Of a stretch of 64,000 nucleotides of DNA, positions 41,672-64,000 are shown in pieces. Source of the stretch: Vitrella brassicaformis CCMP3155. Lineage: Eukaryota; Protista; Chromerida. Below the pieces are notes generated by a model, which was given only the letters and a program-made list of their open reading frames with translations, did not search any database and was not told the DNA's origin. A program made the position numbers and the translations under genes. Where the stretch lies: positions 67,349 through 131,348 of the forward strand of contig CDMY01000296.1 in the NCBI GenBank assembly GCA_001179505.1. Reading direction: 5' to 3'. Each line of letters starts with the position of its first letter. Position 1 is the first letter of the stretch.

Positions 41672-41971
41672 NNNNNNNNNNNNNNNNNNNNNNNNNNNNN
41701 NNNNNNNNNNNNNNNNNNNNNNNNNNNNNNNNNNNNNNNNNNNNNNNNNNNNNNNNNNNNNNNNNNNNNNNNNNNNNNNNNNNNNNNNNNNNNNNNNNNN
41801 NNNNNNNNNNNNNNNNNNNNNNNNNNNNNNNNNNNNNNNNNNNNNNNNNNNNNNNNNNNNNNNNNNNNNNNNNNNNNNNNNNNNNNNNNNNNNNNNNNNN
41901 NNNNNNNNNNNNNNNNNNNNNNNNNNNNNNNNNNNNNNNNNNNNNNNNNNNNNNNNNNNNNNNNNNNNNNN
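41672..41971. other. Assembly gap (300 N), followed by a poly-C run
   Basis: N run seen directly. Confidence 1.
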
Positions 41972-43147: not shown

Positions 43148-43447
43148 NNNNNNNNNNNNNNNNNNNNNNNNNNNNNNNNNNNNNNNNNNNNNNNNNNNNN
43201 NNNNNNNNNNNNNNNNNNNNNNNNNNNNNNNNNNNNNNNNNNNNNNNNNNNNNNNNNNNNNNNNNNNNNNNNNNNNNNNNNNNNNNNNNNNNNNNNNNNN
43301 NNNNNNNNNNNNNNNNNNNNNNNNNNNNNNNNNNNNNNNNNNNNNNNNNNNNNNNNNNNNNNNNNNNNNNNNNNNNNNNNNNNNNNNNNNNNNNNNNNNN
43401 NNNNNNNNNNNNNNNNNNNNNNNNNNNNNNNNNNNNNNNNNNNNNNN
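43148..43447. other. Assembly gap (300 N), flanked on both sides by poly-C
   Basis: N run seen directly. Confidence 1.
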
Positions 43448-45671
43448 CCCCCCCCCCCCCCCCAAACCCACATGCAGCCCCGCCGCCAGGAGGTGAGTCA
43501 GTGTGGTGGGTGGGCAGGGATATATGGGTGAGGTCGGGGAAGGGAAAAACGACTGCCAACACGAACCAATATAAAACATCAACTAGTCCATGCACGGGCA
43601 TCGCATCGGTCGATCGGCTGTGTCGTTGAAAGGCTGGCTGCGTGGGTCGGACGGACGGGACGGACAGGTGCGTGGGCGTGCCAGAGGCAGAAAGGCAAGT
43701 TAGGCAGGCAGGCAAGCTGACAGAGTCTCGAAGGGCCGCTCGCCGCACCGTGCTCGCACGCACATCACATGGCGGCAAAAAATGAAAAACGAGGAGGGGG
43801 GCTGCAATGAATGCTAACGAAAAAAAGGCAATTAAGGCAACAGAACAACCAGCAATTGTCGTGTCGAGCGAAAAGGGCCTGTGGGCTTGTGGCGGTGGAT
43901 CGTCGGCCGGCTTAAATCATCAGCGACACGCACACACACACGTATGAAATGCTATGCGTAGGAGCACCCTGTCAGTCAGGAAGTAATCATGTGTTTGTAC
44001 GCAAGTAAGACAACGGAAGGCCTGCACTCACCGAAGGTCAGGTCGGCCGCCAGGAGCTCAGGAGCCCTGTAATAACAACATAAGAAACACCAGGGTTTGT
44101 ATCACACCAACCTCAACCCAACCAGGCCAAAACAATTGCACAAATAAATAAACACGCAAGCAATGATATACGAGCAACAATCACGAGCGATAAAACACCG
44201 ACCGACCGACCGATCTTACAGGGCCCCACTCACGTCCTTCTCCGACAGACATTTACTTACTTCCCTCCCTCCCTACCTCTCTCTCTCATCTGTCTGTCCG
44301 AGCGTGTGCGTAGGTGCGTGTGAGCATTGTACGTATGAGCGTGAGTGAGTGCATCACATGGCATGAGTGAGCGTGAGTGTGGAGGGCGGAAAGAAATCAG
44401 TAATTGGCCATGTACGCACACAGGCAGGGAGGGAGACAGACGGCCACTTACGCGGACAGAGATGTGGATATATGTATGCATGTCATGTGTGGCTGATTCA
44501 TGTGTAAGCATGTACGTATGCATTCCATGTACGCATCCATACAGCCGCAGCCGCCAGTGTATGTCGATAAAGCAGGAATCCATCCATGTACACGAGCGCG
44601 CAGGAGCAACCAATCCAGCGATCGAGCCAGAGCGAGGGAGAAGAACACTTAGAGCAAGTATGCGATGAATGAAGCAGGCAGCCAAGCCGAGTCAAATCAC
44701 GCCGAAGAAGCCCCTCTCTGGCCCACCGTCTGTACAAAATAGTGGGGGGTCTCGGCCAACCCTTGGGAAGAAGTGACACACACACACACACAGATAGATG
44801 GCACATCATCACATCATCACATCTCATGGAGGAGCAAAACCAGCGTTTAGATATGGGAATACGTGTACGGGGTGGCAGTGCATGTGCGATCGGTACCTAC
44901 ATGTATGTGTACCGATGGATGCACCTTCACCTTCGTAGCACCAACTTGCCAATGAATGAATGAATGTATACAGACAGACAGATGTGTATGTATGGATGTA
45001 TGTATGTATGTAGGCAGACAGACAGACATGCAGACGTGCCTCCCTCCCTGCTTCCATCCATCGATCCTTCAGACACTTCACCAGACCGCAATGCATCACA
45101 TCACATTACACACACCACACCACGGGCTGCACCAATTCTGACCCGCTCGAGTTGCCCGTAGACACACATCCATGTACCTCCGTACGTACGCACCTGCGAT
45201 CCGTCCCCCCTTCATTTATCCCTTCATTCACTGATTCATCTCTGTCTGTCTGTCTCTCTTCCTGTCTGTCTGTCTTGATAGCCTCTTCGCAACTGACGGA
45301 GAAAATGGTACGAAATGCCCGTCACAGCAGGCAGCCGAACACCTCACTGACAGCTCCCTCCCTCCCGGCCCGTCCATCCATCCATCGATCCATCCGTATG
45401 CATACATCAAAACTGCATTGACAGTCAACCAAACACCGACCGCATCACTCGCACCACATCGCACCACACCACACCACACCGTCACCTGCCTGCCTTCAGC
45501 CATCGGTCACTGTCTCCATTACACACGCACCACCACACCATCAGCACATCACACCATACATCGTCACATACACGCTCAAGCAAGTCCAGACAGACACCAT
45601 TCATTGCGATCCACAAGGCAGACACCCAAACCAGCATGTGCCCCCTCCCCACTGTCGTGGGTGGGCCTCAT

Positions 45672-48600
45672 TCACCGACTCCCGCCTCCCGATAGGGCGT
45701 CCAGGCGTTCCAGCGGCTGCAGGCCGGTGTAGCACTGGCCTTCAATGACCCACGAGGGAATGCCGCACGACGGCGCGCACTCGTTGGTCAGTGTGGGGTC
45801 GTTGACGCACTCGACATAGTCGATCTTGTCAGCTGCATCACCGAACATGGCCTTTTGCTGCGCGCAATAGGGACACCAGTTCATGCCGTACATCACAGCT
45901 CCTGCCATGCCATGCCACACCAACACAGACACATACACACAGTGTTGTTGATTGCGCCATGCCCAACGGGCACTCCCCCCTTGCCCGCCCATTCAGCTCA
46001 CCGACGCTGTCGAGCTGCTCAGCCACCCTGGTTCCCATGTCCTCACCACCATCACCATCACCATCAGCATCAGCATCGTCGGGAGGTGGGGTGGTGCCAT
46101 CCGCCACCTGCAGCCACCTCCTCGCCCCACGCATGTTCCCGATTTTCACATCGACACCAACAGTGGGCGCACTGCTCAGCTGCCGAGTGGATGCGATAGC
46201 CTCTAGTCGCTCCAATGGCTGCAGGCCGGTGTAGCACTGGCCTTTGATTGTCCATGACGGGATGCCACACGCAGGCGCGCACTCGTTGGTCAGTGTGGGG
46301 TCGTTGACGCACTCGACGTAGGTGATCTGGTCGACGGCATCACCGAACATGGCCTTCTGCTGCGCGCAGTAAGGGCACCAGTTCATGCCGTACATCACAG
46401 CACCTACAGGAAGTAAGACGACAACAGACAAATGAAAAGCGCCACGTCAGCCAGCCAGCGGTGTCTCTTATGCCGCGTACGTACCAGCGTCCTTGAGTTT
46501 CTCTGCCACTGCTGTGGCATTCGGCGCCCCCTGCAGCTGTCTTGTTCTCATCCGTGTGGTGTTGTCCATGTACTCGTGGTCAAAGTTGCTCCACTTGGCC
46601 AGTGTCTCGAGTGACTGCACGCCCGTCATCGAGTCGACCGTGTTGTTGACCGTCCGGTTGGAGGCGTCATTGAAACGGAACCATGAGGGCGTCTCCTTTA
46701 TCTGCAAACACACAGATGAATGAAACCAGATGGTGTGCGTGGGTGGGGTGGGGGAGAGGTCAATCAAAGCGGGCTGCTGACTGACCTCCATGACTTCGCA
46801 TTCCTTGGGGGCTGCCTCGCACTCGACGTAGATCTGGTGCTTCCTGAGCTTGTCGAAGGCCTCGCCGAACTCGGTCTTCTGTTTCTTGCAGTAGATGCAG
46901 AAACGAGACCCGTACACAACCACATCTGTATGAGACCCCACACACCACACGAGACAGACCACCCAATACAATACAATGCATAACCACTTTCCTTCCCCGC
47001 CACCATTCCATATATTACGTACGTACCATTTTCCTTCATGTGATCAGCAAGGCCGTGTGCGAAGGCCTGGCGGGCCGCATCGAGAGTGCTCCACTGGAAG
47101 CCTGTCGCCTCAGCGACGCTCTCCGGGTCGAGCAGGTCGAAGTGCATGGCGCCGTCGATGCTCCAGACGGGCAGGACGGGTGGCAGGTTGGCGGCCTCGC
47201 ACTCCCTGGGGGTGACCTCGCAGTCGACGAAGGCGATGGCCTCGAAGGACTCACCGAAGGACTCCTTAATGCTGTCGACCTTCGGATCGCTGCCCTGGCC
47301 GTACAGCTTCGCACCTGTGTGGGTTTCAATCAACGTGTGTGTAAGTCAGTACACAGGGGGCAGATGCTCTGCTCGTGTCTGGTCTGTTGACTGACTGACC
47401 TTTCTCCTTGAGGTGGGCAACGAGCTCTGCAGTGGGCTGCTGGTCGGTCTGCTGCGGGCTGACCGCCCCAGCGCCAGACACCATCACGCCCGCCAGGCCG
47501 TCCTCATCCACTCCTTTGGTCTGCTGGTGCGGGCGGAGCTCATTTCCCTGCAGCAGCGTCACGAGCTGCTCGAGTGTGAGGATGCCCTCGTAGTGCTGCC
47601 CGTCGATGACCCATGTGGGGTAGGAGGCGATGTTCTTGTCGAGGCACTTCTGCGGCTGGGCGTCGGGGCCGCTGCGGGCGCACTCGACGTAGTTGGGCTT
47701 GACGGACTCCCACTCCTGGCCGAAGAGCTTCTTCTGCTTCCGGCAAGCTGAGCACAGCCATGATCCGTAGATGTTCGCATCTGCGTGGCGTGAAACGACA
47801 CACAGCCAGAAGTGATTGATAGATACATGGATGGATGTAGTCAGTCAGTGAGTGCTGTGGTTGGAATGTGAGGGTGTGTAGTGAGTGCTGTGGAGTGGTG
47901 CAGTGGCCCACCAGGAACCCCACCCACCTTTGTCCTTGATGAGTTGTGCCGCCATTTTGGCCTGCTTGCGCTCCGAGTCTTCGGTGAGTGTGAAGGACTT
48001 GCCGCCAGCTGTGGAGAAGTAGTCGGCAAAGGTGATGTTCTGCGCGGCGAAGTCACTCACTGTGGTCACACCTACACACACACAAAACCCAACAGATGAT
48101 ATGTGGGAGGCCTCTGTCTGCTCGATGTCCTCGTGTTGTGTAGTGTCGGCTCGCTTGGCAACTCACCGAGTACAGTGGTTCTGAATTGGACCCAAGCGAA
48201 GAGGGCCATGACACCTGCCATGGTGGTACATGTCAGGACAGCCATCTTGGTCGGTGTGACGACTCGGGTGGTGGTTGCGATGACGAAGAGGATGAAGCAC
48301 ACGCACGCACTGATGATGCAGTAGGGACAAAACTCCTGGATGTAGTAGCCCATCAAGATCATCAAGTAACAGCTGCATGCACCAAACCACCACAACAGCC
48401 ACACCACACCACACCACACCCGTCAGTCAACACACAGACAGACACACATGGAGCTTCCGATCGCCTCCCTCCTCCCCGCGGCCGCCCCGCCCACCTGAAT
48501 GTGGCCATGGCGGCGACGCAAGCCAGGATGAGCACCCGATTGACCCGCTCCCACTTGCCCCTCCCGCCATCGCTCAGGCACTCGCACACACCGTCGCAGC

Positions 48601-49579
48601 CCTCAGTGCTCGAGCTGTCCCACTGCTTGATGGGCTGCACCGACGAGGACTTGGCCAGACTCAGTGCGCGCCGCTTGCGCGCCACCATCCTGACCATCCG
48701 CGTCATCAGAGGCACCAGAGTGAGGCACGCCAGAGCCACGTAGGCCAGCAGCCCGAAGGCAGCCACGGGGAAGCCCAGGAACTCAGAAAACGGACCTGAT
48801 GGACATTGATAGTAGATTGACAGACATGTCATGTACACACCTGCTTGACCAGCAGGGTGTGACGTTCATTAATCACTCTCTCTCATACGCTCGCTCATCT
48901 ATATATATGGCCCCTGACTGACTGCCTGACGTCTTGACGTACCATCGAGGACAGCGCTGCATCCGCCGGTTGCGCAGCCTCCCTTGTTCTTCTCACTCGA
49001 GAAGTGGCGCGCCGTTAAATAGAGAGACTCGCCCACACCCCCCAGCGCAATCACGCCCATGACCACACGCACGCTCCAGTGCCACCCACCCCAGGCGATG
49101 CCTGCTGCTGCTGCCAGTTCTGCCCTTGCTGCAGCAGTGGGCCGCTGCTTGCCTTGATGATGATGTTTGTGCTGGTGGTGCTGGCCAGGCTGAGTGGTTT
49201 TCTTCACTCCCTTGGGCATCCGCCGACTGCCGGGCAGCTGATACGGCCCCTCTGGAGGCCAGTGCTCGTCCGTGTTGGCCTCACTGCAGACCTTGGGGGT
49301 GACAGAGTAGACTGTAGGGGTGCTGCTTTCAGGGGCGGCCATGGCCTCCTCGACCAGCCCGGAAAGGGCCTCGCTCCGGGGGCTGTCGACCAGGTGGTCA
49401 ACGGTCTGCTGGATCCGCCGCTCGTTCTGCCTGTTGGTGTCTTGGGGGTTGAAGATGGCGTCAGCAAAGCTGGCCTGGTCGTCTGAGTCGAGCATAATGC
49501 CGGCGACGTCCGTCATGCTGGGAGTTTGGGTGAGGTGCGACGAGGGCGTCTGGATCTGCTGGATCTGCTGATCTTCCAT
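45672..49579 (-). CDS. Vitamin K epoxide reductase (VKOR/LTO1-like) fused to five tandem thioredoxin/glutaredoxin-like domains
   Basis: VKOR: TM1 VVMGVIALGGVGESLYLT, loop CATGGCSAVLDGPFSEFLGFPVAAFGLLAY, CxxC FCPYCIISA, TM5. Trx domains: IYGSWLCSACRKQK; LYGQGSDPKV (no Cys); VYGSRFCIYCKKQK; MYGMNWCPYCAQQK twice. Each has YVEC (FVDC in domain 2) and a P-S/T/V-W motif. All five domain-module lengths check in frame. Confidence 0.92.
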
Positions 49580-49748
49580 TCTCAGTAATGCTGATGGTAT
49601 CGTACTCCACCGCCTATCCGTATCTCCTTTGAGCACTAGAGAAATAGCCGTTAAGGTGGTCTAAGCTCGCAAGATCTGAGCTGAGCTCGCTGACGGCACC
49701 TCAACGTCTCCACTGTCTGGTGCAGCAGAGAGACCTGCTGGTCACGAT

Positions 49749-50770
49749 ATGCGGAGAAGAGTGTGCATGCGGCAGGATTCGTCGATTTGCAACAGGCATG
49801 GACAACTGCAGTGGAGGAGAATGGACGGATATTCGATGAAGGCACCGGACGCCGGCAGGAGGGCTGAGGTCATGAGGAGCGTCGAGACACAAGCTGCGAC
49901 ACGGCGACATGAATCCACCCACAGACCACCGTGAGAGAGATGCTTGACAGACAGCAAATGCTGGCAAACTCCTGGCATGCTCTTTGTGCGCGCGTGTGTG
50001 TACATGTGGCTCTTTCTTTCCGCTTAGGCAGCTGCATTATGCTGGGACCGTGTGCCGTGACCCGTCTGCACTGATGAAGAAACCCGCAAGAGCCAAAGGC
50101 ACGTTTTCTTGCAAGGCAAACCCGCCCAGCCGTCTCCCCAGCTGTCTGTTTATCTCCCCCTCTCTCTGTTCCATGCCATGCACGCAGACGCTGTTCGGGC
50201 CACCCTGGCGGTTCTTGAGAGCAAGACACCGAGTGAGAGGACTCCCTGTCTATGACTGCAGACGCATCTATCATGAAGGGCCCTTCATGCAATCAATGCA
50301 TTGTCATTCGTGCAGCCGTCGAGAGAAGAGAGGATCTCGAGTATGATGGCGCCTCAGCTGCTCGTCCGCCAATGCCGCCGACACAGCGGAGAGGCAGGAG
50401 TGTGGGGCCGCATGCCGCCGCCATCCGGAAGGCTGTCAGCTCTTTGTCGGTCTCCAAGTTGAACACGACCCGTGAAGAATCGGTGACCCGCGAGACAGAG
50501 GAAGGCACATACACACACACTCCTTCATCTAATTGATTGGTTCCCTTGGTGTGCCTTCAGGAGGTTGGGGCTTTTTACGACTGGTTGGCCTCGCATGGTC
50601 TGGAGGGGTACATGGCCCAGCTGCTGTCGAATGGATTCTCAATAGACGTATGTAAAAGGGAACGAACATGCATACGAGGGGCTGGCAACCAGACGCATCA
50701 GCCCACACTGTTGCTACGCGCAGGTGCTGTCGCGGGGGTGTGATAACGGGGAGCTCCATAGGCGAATGAG
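49749..50770 (+). CDS. Possible hypothetical protein with SAM-domain-like exon
   Basis: Exon 50561-50648 EVGAFYDWLASHGLEGYMAQLLSNGFSID resembles a SAM domain N-terminus and has good splice sites. The remaining exons are not resolved. Confidence 0.3.
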
Positions 50771-51231
50771 AGAGGTCCTCACCTTCCAAACAGGTAGGCA
50801 CTAGTGTCAAGCGCACACGAGTTCACACTACATGAAGCAGCGATATCGATTGCCCTATGGTCTGGTGGAATGCTGTCTGCAGAGGCCGACTGCAGGCGAC
50901 TGTTGAAAGCGGTCAAGGCTCTGGCGGGCCCTGAAAGGCACTGAAAGAGTGTGTCGTAGGCCAGACCCGTATCATCGATAGCGCCACACGTGCATGTATG
51001 TACGGACATCTCCCGATGGATGGATGGATGGACACGCCTCGTTTGTGTCTTGCTACGACTCTCTCTCTACCTTGGAGTGCCGATAAATGTTGTTTCGCAT
51101 AGCCAAGCGGGAACTGCGTATACTGTGCATGGCTGTCTTCGTCACTATACTTGCATGGCAGTGACGAGCGAACAAGGGAGACGCCCCCCAGGACGACCCG
51201 CGTCTCGCCGTTTGTAAATTAATGCGGCGGA

Positions 51232-53037
51232 ATGATGTTTGTGGTGGTTTTGGCTTCTCTGACCTGTTGTGCGGTGGGTGCTCCATTGCCATGGTGGCAG
51301 GAATCTTCACTCGCCAACGCCAAGTCCATGGCGCTGACGTACGGGCTCTTCCATGAAGATGAAGGCACACTCAGATCAGATCTGGCATGCACTGTGTGCA
51401 TGGATGGCGTCATGCAGCATGGACAGGGAAGCTAAACGATACTTCTCTTACTCGGAGGGACACATTGCAGGTAGGTACATACGTACAGTACTGCATGGTG
51501 GCACACTCACATCTGTTTCTCTTGTGGGTGGATCTGTTGTGGTATCGGTGCTGTCTGCAGAGAGCGAGAAGGTTCTGCAGATGTACTTCGAGTACTCAAG
51601 GAACCCCCTCGTCAAAACGGTGAGGCACAATCAGCCGGCCCATTGGCACACATTGGATTGTGTGCGACCCGGCCCGGCCCTGTCTGTGCCGTTTGTTTGT
51701 TTGTGTCCCTTCCATTGCAATGGATTGGCAGATATATGAGACCGGCTTCAACGGTGGCCACAGTAGTGCCATCTTCCTCACGGCCAACCCCACCGCACGG
51801 GTCATCTCATTCGACATCGGACAACACCCATACACACAGGGCAACGTACGGACGGACGAGTGCACACACACACACACACACACACAAGGCTCCGCTGCTG
51901 CTGAATGGATGGATGGATGGATTGCGATGCAGGCGGGAGTGTTGAGGGGTCTGTATGGCGAGAGGTTCCAAGTGGTGTGGGGCGACTCGCGCAACTCCAT
52001 CCCCTACATGCAGCGAATGATGCCGCAACTCAGGTGTCCACTCATGGATGGATGGATGGACGGATGGATGGATGGACGGATGGCCTGTGTGTGTTGACGT
52101 GTGTGCAGGTGCGACCTCTTCAGCGTGGATGGGTCACACTCCTTTGAGGGTGCGTTGGGAGACCTGCTCAACTTCCACAGAATGGCCTCGTGCAGAAACT
52201 GGATACTCATGGTACAGCTTACATGCCCTGTCTGTCTGTCTGTGACAATTCATCTGTGGTGGGCAACTGTTTTGGCGCCTGTCTGGTGGCAGGACGACGC
52301 CGGCTGGCGGTCGGTGAATAGGGCGTGGCAGACGGCAAAGGACCTGGGCATCGTCACACAGCTCGAGTGCTTCGCTGACACGCACGGAGCGCTCAACTAC
52401 CCATTCATCGACACGCCCGACAACCGCACGTACGAACGAAGAGTCAGTCCCCCCGGCCCCNNNNNNNNNNNNNNNNNNNNNNNNNNNNNNNNNNNNNNNN
52501 NNNNNNNNNNNNNNNNNNNNNNNNNNNNNNNNNNNNNNNNNNNNNNNNNNNNNNNNNNNNNNNNNNNNNNNNNNNNNNNNNNNNNNNNNNNNNNNNNNNN
52601 NNNNNNNNNNNNNNNNNNNNNNNNNNNNNNNNNNNNNNNNNNNNNNNNNNNNNNNNNNNNNNNNNNNNNNNNNNNNNNNNNNNNNNNNNNNNNNNNNNNN
52701 NNNNNNNNNNNNNNNNNNNNNNNNNNNNNNNNNNNNNNNNNNNNNNNNNNNNNNNNNNNNGAGTGCATTCGACAACGGGGCGCGACAGCTGAAAGAGCTG
52801 GAGCAGCAGATCATCAGGGCGGCACAGATTGGGGGTGGGGGTGGGGGGTGGGCCGGCAAGAATGCGACAGCATGTAGTGGACAGCAGAATGGGACGGCGT
52901 GCAGCCAGCAGACGCAGCAGACGGCAGAGGGAGAGCGAGACACCGCCAGAGGAGGTCTGCCGCCTTCGTATGACGCTACGTGTCGGTGGTTTGCTGAGCG
53001 GCCGGTGTCGACACGGACGCTCGTCAGGCCCGTGTAG
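51232..53037 (+). CDS. Secretory-pathway class I SAM-dependent methyltransferase (Methyltransf_24-like)
   Basis: Signal/anchor MMFVVVLASLTCCAVGA; IYETGFNGGHSSAIFL, VISFDIG, VVWGDS, CDLFSVDGSHSFEGALGDL, LM|DDAGW. Interrupted by the gap at 52461-52760; the tail frame after the gap is inferred. Confidence 0.8.
52461..52760. other. Assembly gap (300 N) inside the methyltransferase gene
   Basis: N run seen directly, preceded by a C-rich run. Confidence 1.
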
Positions 53038-53528: not shown

Positions 53529-59772
<6,244 letters not shown>

Positions 59773-63521: not shown

Positions 63522-64000
63522 GCACATGCACAGTGCACGCCCCGCCCCCTCTCTCTCTCCCCTCTCTGCACACACAGCCCACCCCAGCGCACATCCGTGT
63601 GTGGCAAGGTGCCTGCCTGTCTGCTGTGTACTCCTGCACACGCGCATTCACGAAATTCACAAACCCAACGCATAATTAGGGTTTAGTTGAGCACATCAGC
63701 CGCCTCGCCGCCCCCCTGCAATGGGAAAAAGCTCTCAAAATCAGAGAGTGTTTACAGTTGCGAGCTTGAGTGGTGCTAGGGGTCGCTAACGGCCCATGCC
63801 CTTTCCGAAAACACAACAGCACCAGAGAGGCGCTCACACAGAGAGGCCACACACGAAGCGAGGAGCAGCCAGAAGGCCCCCCAGCTGACATCTCTCTCTG
63901 TCTGTGTTTGCCTGTCTTCAGGAAGATGCTGCCCATTCTCAGCGAATCGGCCATCCTGTGAGGTGCCCTAGCAAAGTGTTTGTGGCCCATCTATGAAAGC

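What the first reader, a model, noticed from the sequence alone, without database searches (positions are those of the whole stretch)
45672..49579. VKOR fused to five tandem thioredoxin-like domains: candidate self-contained disulfide-generating module
Seen: an intact VKOR (loop pair CATGGC, TM CPYC) followed after TM5 by five Trx-like domains with active sites CSAC, none (GQGSDPK), CIYC, CPYC and CPYC. Established: cyanobacterial VKOR-Trx and plant LTO1 carry a single Trx domain. Inference: a multi-domain electron relay or PDI-like array, with a redox-dead second domain analogous to PDI b domains, hard-wired to a quinone-reducing VKOR. I do not know this architecture from any described protein.
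Basis: partly seen in the sequence, partly recalled or inferred. Interest (0 to 1): 0.88.

Follow-up and report, generated by a model that had tools for sequence, protein, structure and literature searches.

The report
VKOR enzyme fused to five thioredoxin-like domains
A chromerid alga (Vitrella or a close relative) makes one messenger RNA for a membrane quinone reductase of the VKOR family joined to five thioredoxin-like domains, a layout described nowhere and seen otherwise only in a three-domain sister gene, and probably an all-in-one machine for making protein disulfide bonds.

Summary
Window 45672-49579 (minus strand) holds a 10-exon gene for a 981-aa protein. It has a hydrophilic N-terminal region, a five-helix VKOR domain (loop Cys pair CATGGC, membrane CPYC), and five Trx-like modules of the cyanobacterial-VKOR/LTO1 type (CSAC, none, CIYC, CPYC, CPYC).

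- **Single gene:** Spliced contigs from public RNA-like runs match every predicted junction and link VKOR to the last Trx exon. A DNA-like run shows no joints.
- **Module 2:** It lacks both catalytic Cys but folds as a Trx-like domain (AF2 pLDDT 88; best PDB match 3KP8).
- **Selection:** A 92%-identical environmental contig keeps modules 2-5 and all motifs. Exons are 95-99% identical, introns 79-93%, and dN/dS is 0.30.
- **Rarity:** Of the 47 multi-domain proteins among the best 150 hits in 1.84 billion representatives, only one carries VKOR: Vitrella CEL94418.1 (three Trx). It is the sister of this gene and shares intron positions.
- **Other arrays:** Stand-alone tandem arrays of this Trx type (2-5 domains) exist in other algae.
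- **Targeting:** There is no signal peptide or plastid leader, unlike diatom LTO1 homologues.

Most likely function is a quinone-driven thiol oxidase with a built-in multi-Trx array, probably in the endomembrane lumen; this is inferred. It is a new variant of a known kind.

The scan had already noted this same stretch in overlapping windows, and a three-Trx paralogue elsewhere in this genome.

The parts
45672..49579 (-). Whole coding region: 10 exons, 981 aa. Exons are 49579-48943, 48795-48495, 48372-48167, 48071-47928, 47780-47400, 47314-47027, 46925-46786, 46701-46485, 46403-46002 and 45901-45672.
   Evidence: All introns are GT..AG and 81-147 nt long, giving a single open frame. The lengths of the spliced RNA contigs equal the model exactly.
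49085..49579 (-). Hydrophilic N-terminal region (about aa 1-165). It is acidic at the start, then His/Lys-rich, with no signal peptide.
   Evidence: The hydropathy scan finds no hydrophobic stretch before aa 170. The RNA contig ends at 49627, and the only ATG in 49700-49570 is at 49579. Pfam finds nothing before aa 173.
48167..49084 (-). VKOR domain spread over exons 1-3 (aa ~166-379), with five hydrophobic helices at about aa 170-190, 222-242, 300-318, 327-345 and 356-374.
   Evidence: PF07884 matches in three exon pieces. See also the alignment with 17 VKORs, the hydropathy scan and the VKOR tree.
48959..48976 (-). Loop cysteine pair C202-ATGG-C207.
   Evidence: It aligns with the conserved loop Cys pair of the other VKORs.
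48318..48329 (-). Membrane active site C328-P-Y-C331 at the start of helix 4.
   Evidence: It aligns with the invariant CxxC of the VKOR family.
48578..48598 (-). Cys cluster CDGVCEC inside a roughly 55-aa basic insertion between helices 2 and 3 (predicted cytosolic loop).
   Evidence: Seen in the translation and alignment. It is absent from the three-Trx sister protein. Its function is unknown.
47539..47778 (-). Trx-like module D1 (aa 431-510), active site CSAC at 47743-47754.
   Evidence: phmmer against PDB: 3KP8 E=2.7e-16.
47091..47312 (-). Trx-like module D2 (aa 558-631) with no CxxC (GQGSDPK at 47280-47300). It keeps the structural Cys pair and the Pro-x-Trp.
   Evidence: 3KP8 E=1.4e-3. 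AF2 model pLDDT 87.7. Foldseek best match 3KP8, TM 0.68, rmsd 2.1 A. The motif is identical in the relative L005, and dN/dS is 0.21.
46591..46923 (-). Trx-like module D3 (aa 654-739), active site CIYC at 46888-46899. It is split by an extra phase-0 intron (46785-46702) and carries an 11-aa insertion with N-x-T sequons.
   Evidence: Profile hit, full-length alignment and RNA joint 46701|46786.
46180..46401 (-). Trx-like module D4 (aa 773-846), active site CPYC at 46366-46377.
   Evidence: 3KP8 E=2.5e-15. A 207-nt direct repeat shared with D5 is 86% identical.
45675..45899 (-). Trx-like module D5 (aa 907-981), active site CPYC at 45864-45875. The stop codon is at 45672-45674.
   Evidence: D5 is the sister of D4 in the domain tree. 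The two modules are 74% identical as protein over 90 aligned columns, N-terminal helix included. An RNA contig runs unspliced through the stop.

Best explanation
This is one expressed gene of a chromerid alga, Vitrella brassicaformis or a close relative. It encodes a five-helix VKOR-family quinone reductase whose C-terminus carries five tandem Trx-like modules of the LTO1 / cyanobacterial-VKOR type, on the side of the membrane away from the cytosol.

Proposed mechanism, by analogy with the solved Synechococcus enzyme:
1. Substrate cysteines are oxidised by the CxxC of a Trx module. Four modules are competent: CSAC, CIYC, CPYC, CPYC.
2. The electrons pass to the VKOR loop pair C202/C207.
3. They then pass to the membrane CPYC (C328/C331).
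4. They end on a quinone.

The Cys-less module D2, which lies almost directly against D3, would act as a non-catalytic binding or spacer module. The long flexible linkers would let several catalytic heads reach substrates and the VKOR loop.

The array grew by tandem duplication of an exon unit that begins at a conserved phase-1 intron. D4/D5 is the latest copy.

The protein has no signal peptide or plastid leader, whereas a single-Trx paralogue and the diatom homologues have N-terminal extensions. Helix 1 therefore probably serves as a signal anchor, placing the array in the lumen of the ER or endomembrane system rather than the thylakoid. This last step is the least certain.

Shown here: gene structure, transcript, domain homology, fold of D2, conservation and rarity. 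Inferred: catalytic activity, order of electron flow, role of D2 and location.
For: Gene and transcript:
- Model. Spliced contigs in runs X6, X7 and X1 match all junctions, and the DNA-like run X3 is collinear.

VKOR features:
- Pfam VKOR over three exons.
- All four catalytic cysteines are conserved.

Trx modules:
- D1, D4 and D2 are each closest to 3KP8/3KP9, the VKOR-fused Trx.
- The D2 model matches 3KP8 with TM 0.68.
- All modules keep the structural Cys pair and Pro-x-Trp.

Topology:
- K/R residues are concentrated before helix 1 and in the helix 2-3 loop, which fits the VKOR topology with the Trx side extracytoplasmic (read).

Selection:
- Against environmental contig L005, exons are 95-99% identical and introns/UTR 79-93%. 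Exon indels are only multiples of three. dN/dS = 0.30 (15 synonymous, 16 non-synonymous changes; Fisher p = 0.0014). All active-site strings are unchanged.

Origin of the array:
- A phase-1 intron precedes every module.
- The same intron positions occur in the three-Trx sister gene.
- D4 and D5 are sisters.
- The VKOR domains of the five-Trx and three-Trx genes are sisters (87/87 support, 42% identity).

Targeting:
- There is no hydrophobic stretch before aa 170, and the RNA 5' end is 48 nt upstream of the only ATG.
- Diatom homologues P0157 and P0151 begin with a signal peptide ending in an ...SAF / ...NGF motif. The Vitrella single-Trx paralogue P0182 has a 95-aa extension.
Against: - No activity, redox potential or localisation was measured.
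- The position of the family's conserved Ser/Thr (six residues after the second loop Cys) is Gly here. A Ser lies three residues further on, in a G-P-[FY]-S motif. Seven of the eleven other eukaryote-group sequences in the alignment share it, including both Vitrella paralogues.
- The proximal module D1 has the most unusual active site (W-L-CSAC rather than WCPxC), so it is unclear which module talks to the VKOR loop.
- The gene descends from the plastid (LTO1-type) lineage (red-algal origin of a Chromera VKOR in PMC3516247), so a plastid location cannot be excluded. Some plastid membrane proteins of this group are known, from the literature, to lack canonical leaders.
- No ER-retention motif was seen.
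- The dN/dS estimate rests on only 31 substitutions.
Confidence: 0.6

Rival explanations
1. It is a thylakoid (plastid) LTO1 paralogue. The array faces the thylakoid lumen and oxidises lumenal photosynthetic proteins, as plant LTO1 does. The extra modules would widen substrate range or reach.
For: The VKOR and Trx parts belong to the eukaryotic LTO1-type clade (99/95 support). The Trx modules are closest to the cyanobacterial VKOR Trx. The organism is photosynthetic, and a Chromera VKOR was traced to the red-algal endosymbiont.
Against: There is no signal peptide or transit peptide on an RNA-supported 5' end. Diatom homologues carry classic leaders, and the same lineage has a separate single-Trx VKOR with an N-terminal extension that can fill the LTO1 role. 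A five-helix protein would have to cross four plastid envelope membranes without a leader.
Confidence: 0.25
2. The array works mainly as an isomerase/reductase or redox sensor rather than as a net oxidase. The VKOR part would serve only to reset it, or the distal modules would act independently of VKOR as a tethered PDI-like chaperone.
For: - CPYC is the classic glutaredoxin motif, and D4/D5 give weak Glutaredoxin Pfam/NCBIfam hits.
- The modules carry different xx dipeptides.
- Stand-alone arrays of the same Trx type without any VKOR exist in other algae, so the array can work without a fused oxidase.
Against: All four VKOR catalytic cysteines are kept and under constraint. Every characterised VKOR-Trx fusion is an oxidase (established: Synechococcus VKOR, Arabidopsis LTO1).
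Confidence: 0.12
3. It is a decaying or functionless product of exon duplication, or a mis-assembled or mis-joined locus.
For: D4/D5 is a recent duplicate. D2 has lost its cysteines. No full-length model of this protein was found in the protein collections searched.
Against: - The 981-codon frame is intact.
- The spliced transcript appears in three runs from two or three samples.
- A genomic contig in a DNA-like run is collinear with the window.
- An independent environmental contig shows the same D2-D5 order and purifying selection.
Confidence: 0.03

Closest known systems
Synechococcus sp. VKOR-Trx fusion (PDB 3KP9, 3KP8, 4NV2/5/6)
   Same: It has the same membrane core with a loop Cys pair and a membrane CxxC. 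A fifth helix leads to a Trx-like domain of the same subfamily. D1, D4 and D2 all hit it best.
   Different: It has one Trx domain (WCPHC) and is bacterial. The window protein has five modules, one without cysteines, different xx dipeptides, a 165-aa N-terminal region and a 55-aa loop insertion.
Plant LTO1 / AtVKOR (thylakoid lumen thiol oxidoreductase 1)
   Same: It belongs to the same eukaryotic clade of VKOR-Trx fusions. Reviews describe it as bimodular.
   Different: LTO1 has a plastid transit peptide and a single Trx-like domain. The window protein has no leader and five modules.
Vitrella brassicaformis CEL94418.1 / A0A0G4EG13 (VKOR + three Trx: CGHC, CGHC, CEPC), uncharacterised
   Same: It is the sister in the VKOR tree and is 30% identical over 566 aa. 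It shares intron positions in the VKOR part and before Trx modules. It also has no N-terminal signal peptide.
   Different: It has three modules, all with CxxC (two of them the PDI motif CGHC), 21 introns and a short N-terminal region.
PDI family of the ER (PDI a-b-b'-a', ERp72, ERdj5) working with Ero1 or VKORC1
   Same: A string of Trx-fold domains mixes catalytic and non-catalytic members. Animal VKORC1 takes electrons from membrane-tethered Trx-fold partners.
   Different: The modules are of a different Trx subfamily; PDI-family structures score far below 3KP8. There is no signal peptide or KDEL. The oxidase is fused rather than separate.
Stand-alone tandem arrays of LTO1-type Trx-like domains in other algae (P0001, P0002, P0003 and others), undescribed
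   Same: They use the same Trx subfamily, have two to five modules with the same helix-plus-core unit, and include degenerate active sites.
   Different: They have no VKOR. Their degenerate sites keep the first Cys (CxxT). They are an independent expansion near the stramenopile VKOR-Trx group, and they carry a signal-peptide-like N-terminus.

Membership tests
VKOR family (Pfam PF07884) | Profile match over the four-helix core | tested here: met
   Three exon pieces cover profile positions 2-46, 49-87 and 103-133 with 14.5, 21.2 and 17.8 bits. Each piece alone is below the 27.5-bit cutoff, but the simple sum is 53.5 bits. phmmer of the spliced region finds 17 VKORs.
VKOR family (Pfam PF07884) | Four conserved cysteines: a loop pair and a CxxC in helix 4 | tested here: met
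   C202, C207, C328 and C331 align with the invariant columns.
VKOR family (Pfam PF07884) | Conserved Ser/Thr six residues after the second loop Cys | tested here: inconclusive
   This position is Gly. A Ser lies three residues later in a G-P-[FY]-S motif. Seven of the eleven other eukaryote-group sequences in the alignment share it, including the Vitrella single-Trx and three-Trx proteins.
VKOR family (Pfam PF07884) | Quinone reduction coupled to thiol oxidation | not testable with these tools
   This needs an enzyme assay or complementation.
LTO1-type VKOR-Trx fusion | A fifth helix followed by a C-terminal Trx-like domain with CxxC, a second Cys pair and a cis-Pro motif | tested here: met
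   Helix 5 lies at aa 356-374. D1 matches 3KP8 with E=2.7e-16. All motifs are visible in the alignment.
LTO1-type VKOR-Trx fusion | Bimodular layout: exactly one Trx-like domain | tested here: not met
   There are five modules.
LTO1-type VKOR-Trx fusion | Plastid targeting leader and thylakoid location | tested here: not met
   The leader was tested and is absent: there is no hydrophobic or transit-like N-terminus on an RNA-supported start. The location itself is not testable here.
PDI family | PDI-type a and b Trx domains, an ER signal peptide and a C-terminal KDEL-type signal | tested here: not met
   The best structural and sequence matches are the VKOR-fused Trx, not PDI. There is no signal peptide. 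The C-terminus ends in GGGSR.

The most novel reading that the evidence does not exclude
A plastid-derived LTO1 gene was duplicated and lost its plastid leader. It then grew a PDI-like array by exon duplication. The result is a self-contained, quinone-driven oxidative-folding machine in the ER or secretory lumen of chromerids. That would be an Ero1-independent route in which oxidase, relay and substrate-binding modules are one polypeptide, with a division of labour among modules of different redox potential.
Probability: 0.35. Interest if true: 0.75.

Novelty: new variant of a known kind. Interest (0 to 1): 0.6.

Why it matters
VKOR-Trx fusions are the textbook case of a disulfide-generating enzyme joined to its electron donor, and all described ones have a single Trx domain. 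A natural VKOR carrying four catalytic modules and one non-catalytic module would be useful in three ways.

- It offers a ready-made system for asking how electrons move between tethered Trx domains and a membrane oxidase.
- It shows what a redox-dead Trx module may contribute to such an array.
- It shows how exon duplication builds PDI-like arrays.

If the protein sits in the ER, it would also be an example of a plastid-derived enzyme recruited to the secretory pathway in the closest photosynthetic relatives of apicomplexan parasites.

The side observation is that the same Trx type forms stand-alone arrays in other algae. This points to an unstudied group of multi-Trx proteins, possibly plastid-targeted.

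Tried and rejected
**Searches that led nowhere**
- Pfam and NCBIfam on single Trx exons gave only weak Glutaredoxin/Thioredoxin_2 hits below cutoff. The VKOR-fused Trx type has no good model of its own in those libraries, so PDB sequence search was used instead.
- The first alignment of the modules misplaced the second half of D3. I rebuilt it without that fragment.
- Two word-based searches found no full-length copy of the window protein: P0007 whole, and P0165 residues 150-245. The only near-identical entries are exon-sized ORFs from one ENA contig (P0006, P0180).
- A metagenome scan with the D1 exon found no relative.
- The look-up of sequencing runs was busy twice before it answered.

**Ideas considered and dropped**
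- A link to the apicoplast thioredoxins ATrx1/ATrx2. ATrx1 has CPPC and a cytosolic-Trx ancestry according to PMC5823475. I did not test this by sequence.
- P0150, listed with 10 'stretches', is a fibronectin-repeat protein and a false match.

**Limits**
- The Trx-domain tree does not resolve where D1-D3 belong: the branches are long and only 78 columns were usable. Whether the three-Trx and five-Trx arrays share ancestral modules is therefore open.
Full report
**1. What is in the sequence**

On the minus strand between 49579 and 45672 a set of open pieces can be joined through nine GT..AG introns of 81-147 nt. The result is one frame of 981 codons. The exons are 49579-48943, 48795-48495, 48372-48167, 48071-47928, 47780-47400, 47314-47027, 46925-46786, 46701-46485, 46403-46002 and 45901-45672.

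**2. The transcript**

Public runs that hold this stretch were found and four of them were laid on window 45300-51200.

- Runs X6 and X7 hold spliced contigs of 2478 and 2399 nt that run from 49627 (or 49548) in exon 1 to 46288 in exon 9. The pieces and their record positions add up exactly to my exon lengths: 685+301+206+144+381+288+140+217+116 = 2478.
- A 418-nt contig joins exon 9 to exon 10, skipping 100 nt between 46001 and 45900.
- A third contig covers 45300-45801 unspliced, so the stop codon is in the mRNA.
- The contigs break only at the near-identical D4/D5 repeat, as a de Bruijn assembler would do.
- All listed splice joints have CT..AC ends on the + strand, which is GT..AG on the gene's strand. 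They are absent from run X3, whose 5073-nt contig is collinear with the genome.
- Run X1 shows three of the same joints.
- In X6 the depth is zero just upstream of 49634. The only ATG between 49700 and 49570 is the one at 49579.

The VKOR and all five Trx modules are therefore on one mRNA, and no upstream coding exon is seen.

**3. The VKOR part**

- Pfam VKOR (PF07884) matches three consecutive exon pieces over profile positions 2-46, 49-87 and 103-133.
- In an alignment with 17 other VKORs, the loop pair C202/C207 and the membrane C328-P-Y-C331 fall on the conserved cysteine columns.
- The family's conserved Ser/Thr position is Gly, with a Ser three residues on (G-P-F-S). Seven of the eleven other sequences of the eukaryotic group share this G-P-[FY]-S motif, including both Vitrella paralogues. 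It is therefore common in this group rather than a defect of this gene.
- Hydropathy gives five helices.
- Basic residues cluster before helix 1 and in the long helix 2-3 loop. This fits the known VKOR topology, with the Cys loop and the C-terminal domains on the non-cytosolic side. That topology is my reading from the sequence.

**4. The five Trx-like modules**

Each module has the same parts: a helix (..A..LA..LK..G), then x-x-Y-G, the active-site position, Q/K-K..F-G, Y/F-V-E/D-C...C, Pro-x-Trp, Gly and L..L.

- D1 and D4 find the Trx-like domain of Synechococcus VKOR as best solved relative (E=2.7e-16 and 2.5e-15).
- D2 has GSDPK where the others have CxxC, yet still finds the same structure first (E=1.4e-3).
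- An AlphaFold model of the D2 exon, built with a 49-row alignment, has mean pLDDT 87.7. Its best PDB match is 3KP8 (TM 0.68, rmsd 2.1 A over 78 columns), far ahead of any other Trx-fold protein.
- D3 has an extra phase-0 intron and an 11-residue insertion in the hairpin after Pro-x-Trp.
- D4 and D5 share a 207-nt repeat at 86% identity. As protein they are 74% identical over 90 aligned columns, N-terminal helix included.
- The other pairs of modules are 26-36% identical.
- Every module starts two bases after a phase-1 intron at the same place, the Gly/Asp codon before x-x-x-Y-G.

**5. Conservation**

An ENA metagenome contig (L005, 2079 nt) aligns to window 47445-45330 at 92% identity.

- Exons are 95-99% identical, and their only indels are multiples of three in a linker.
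- Introns and the 3' UTR are 79-93% identical, with many indels.
- Over 422 codons there are 15 synonymous and 16 non-synonymous changes. dN/dS is 0.30, and 0.21 for D2 alone. Fisher p = 0.0014 for an excess of synonymous change per site.
- All four active-site strings, including the Cys-less one, are unchanged.

The numbers are small, but they point to purifying selection on D2-D5.

**6. How rare is the architecture**

A profile of the window's modules was run against 1.84 billion representative proteins. It gave 3303 hits, and the best 150 were listed. In that list, 47 proteins have two or more modules.

- A Pfam scan of all 47 finds VKOR in exactly one, P0007. Its 90% cluster contains Vitrella brassicaformis CEL94418.1 / A0A0G4EG13, with 643 aa and modules CGHC, CGHC and CEPC.
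- The nearest large clusters in the ESM Atlas are all single-Trx VKORs of about 290-410 aa.
- Three full-text searches and the VKOR phylogeny review describe only fusions with one Trx-like domain, called 'bimodular'.
- Caveats: only the top 150 hits were seen, so divergent two-module VKORs could lie lower in the list, and eukaryotic gene models are often incomplete.

**7. Relatives in the same lineage**

The VKOR domains of the window protein and the three-Trx protein are sisters (87/87 support, 42% identity). They sit inside a eukaryotic LTO1-type clade (99/95) that also holds a plant LTO1, diatom proteins and a third Vitrella protein, CEM02571.1, which has one WCPHC Trx.

The three-Trx gene (locus L004) shares several intron positions with the window gene:
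- after the loop (..G|P-Y/F-S);
- in helix 3 (..ATFS|);
- at the G|x-x-x-Y-G position before two of its three modules.

In addition, a 425-nt stretch of the Vitrella contig matches window 63553-63974 at 87%. Together these make Vitrella brassicaformis, or a very close relative, the likely source. This identification is inference. No full-length copy of the window protein was found in the protein collections searched.

**8. Targeting**

- The window protein has no hydrophobic segment before aa 170.
- The three-Trx protein likewise has none before its first VKOR helix.
- Diatom single-Trx homologues start with a signal peptide that ends in ...SAF or ...NGF, the usual plastid signature of that group.
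- The Vitrella single-Trx paralogue has a 95-aa Arg/Ser-rich extension.

The simplest reading is that helix 1 acts as a signal anchor, so the array faces the lumen of the ER or a later endomembrane compartment. Five N-x-S/T sequons lie in the array, four of them around D3; this is close to chance expectation and is only weak support. A plastid location is not excluded.

**9. Mechanism**

Proposed by analogy with the solved Synechococcus enzyme and with LTO1 (established knowledge).

- Electrons would flow from substrate thiols to a Trx CxxC, then to the loop pair, then to the membrane CPYC, and finally to a quinone.
- The xx dipeptides differ between modules (SA, IY, PY, PY) and between paralogues (GH, GH, EP in the three-Trx protein; PH in the single-Trx one). 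In Trx-fold proteins this dipeptide sets the redox potential, so a division of labour is plausible.
- D2 sits only a few residues from the helix of D3, whereas D1-D2 and D4-D5 are separated by linkers of about 40-60 low-complexity residues. D2-D3 may therefore work as a pair, somewhat like a non-catalytic plus catalytic pair in PDI.

None of this was tested here.

**10. Other arrays**

Arrays of the same Trx type without VKOR occur in several independent groups.

- One group has four or five modules with position-by-position orthology and CxxT variants (P0001-P0004). It comes from an intron-poor eukaryote, probably a diatom, with no VKOR match in the protein itself or among the called neighbour genes.
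- There are several two-module groups, one of them on MMETSP transcripts.
- There is a three-module group.
- P0005 carries three nearly identical modules.

Multiplication of this module is thus recurrent. Fusion of the array to VKOR is what is special here.

**11. Verdict**

- It is a new variant of a known kind.
- Interest is moderate to high for people working on disulfide-bond formation and on chromerid/apicomplexan cell biology.

Noticed in passing
L001:6001-9009 (protein P0162; also P0001, P0002, P0003, P0004): Stand-alone proteins have four or five tandem LTO1-type Trx-like modules, with CxxC alternating with CxxT-type sites. They have a signal-peptide-like start and one hydrophobic helix. 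They lie on contigs of an intron-poor eukaryote, probably a diatom. No VKOR match was found in the protein or in the called neighbour genes. The modules are orthologous position by position between the proteins. I found no description of them.
   Followed up: partly
L004:8974-10407 versus L004:6681-7999: In the Vitrella contig CDMY01000218.1, the 3' half of the three-Trx VKOR gene (aa 445-643) is repeated about 2.4 kb downstream and annotated as a separate 219-aa protein (CEL94419.1). It is either a partial tandem duplicate or an assembly artefact; 339 N lie in the locus.
   Followed up: partly
window 63553-63974 and L004:8504-8922: A 425-nt stretch is 87% identical between the window and the Vitrella contig. 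It is probably a dispersed repeat or mobile element of this genome.
   Followed up: no
window 45373-45393, 48400-48420, 51015-51032: Short CA/CCA-rich repeats show very high read depth (hundreds to thousands) and many loose ends and false 'joints' in all four runs. This is a dispersed microsatellite-like motif that breaks assemblies. One copy lies inside intron 2 of the gene.
   Followed up: no
window 48578-48598 (-): A Cys cluster, CDGVCEC, lies in the basic, probably cytosolic insertion between VKOR helices 2 and 3. It is absent from the three-Trx sister protein and its function is unknown.
   Followed up: no
window 45300-45671 and beyond (-): The RNA contig that covers the last exon continues more than 1.7 kb past 45300, at higher depth than the gene body. 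This is either a long 3' UTR or an overlapping neighbour transcript.
   Followed up: no
window 41672-41971, 43148-43447, 52461-52760, 58097-58396: Four runs of exactly 300 N, either assembly gaps or masked stretches. They explain the apparent low-GC dips in the composition profile.
   Followed up: no
L005:1-2079: An ENA metagenome contig (ERZ893784) is 92% identical to window 47445-45330. A close relative of the source organism is therefore present in that environmental sample.
   Followed up: partly
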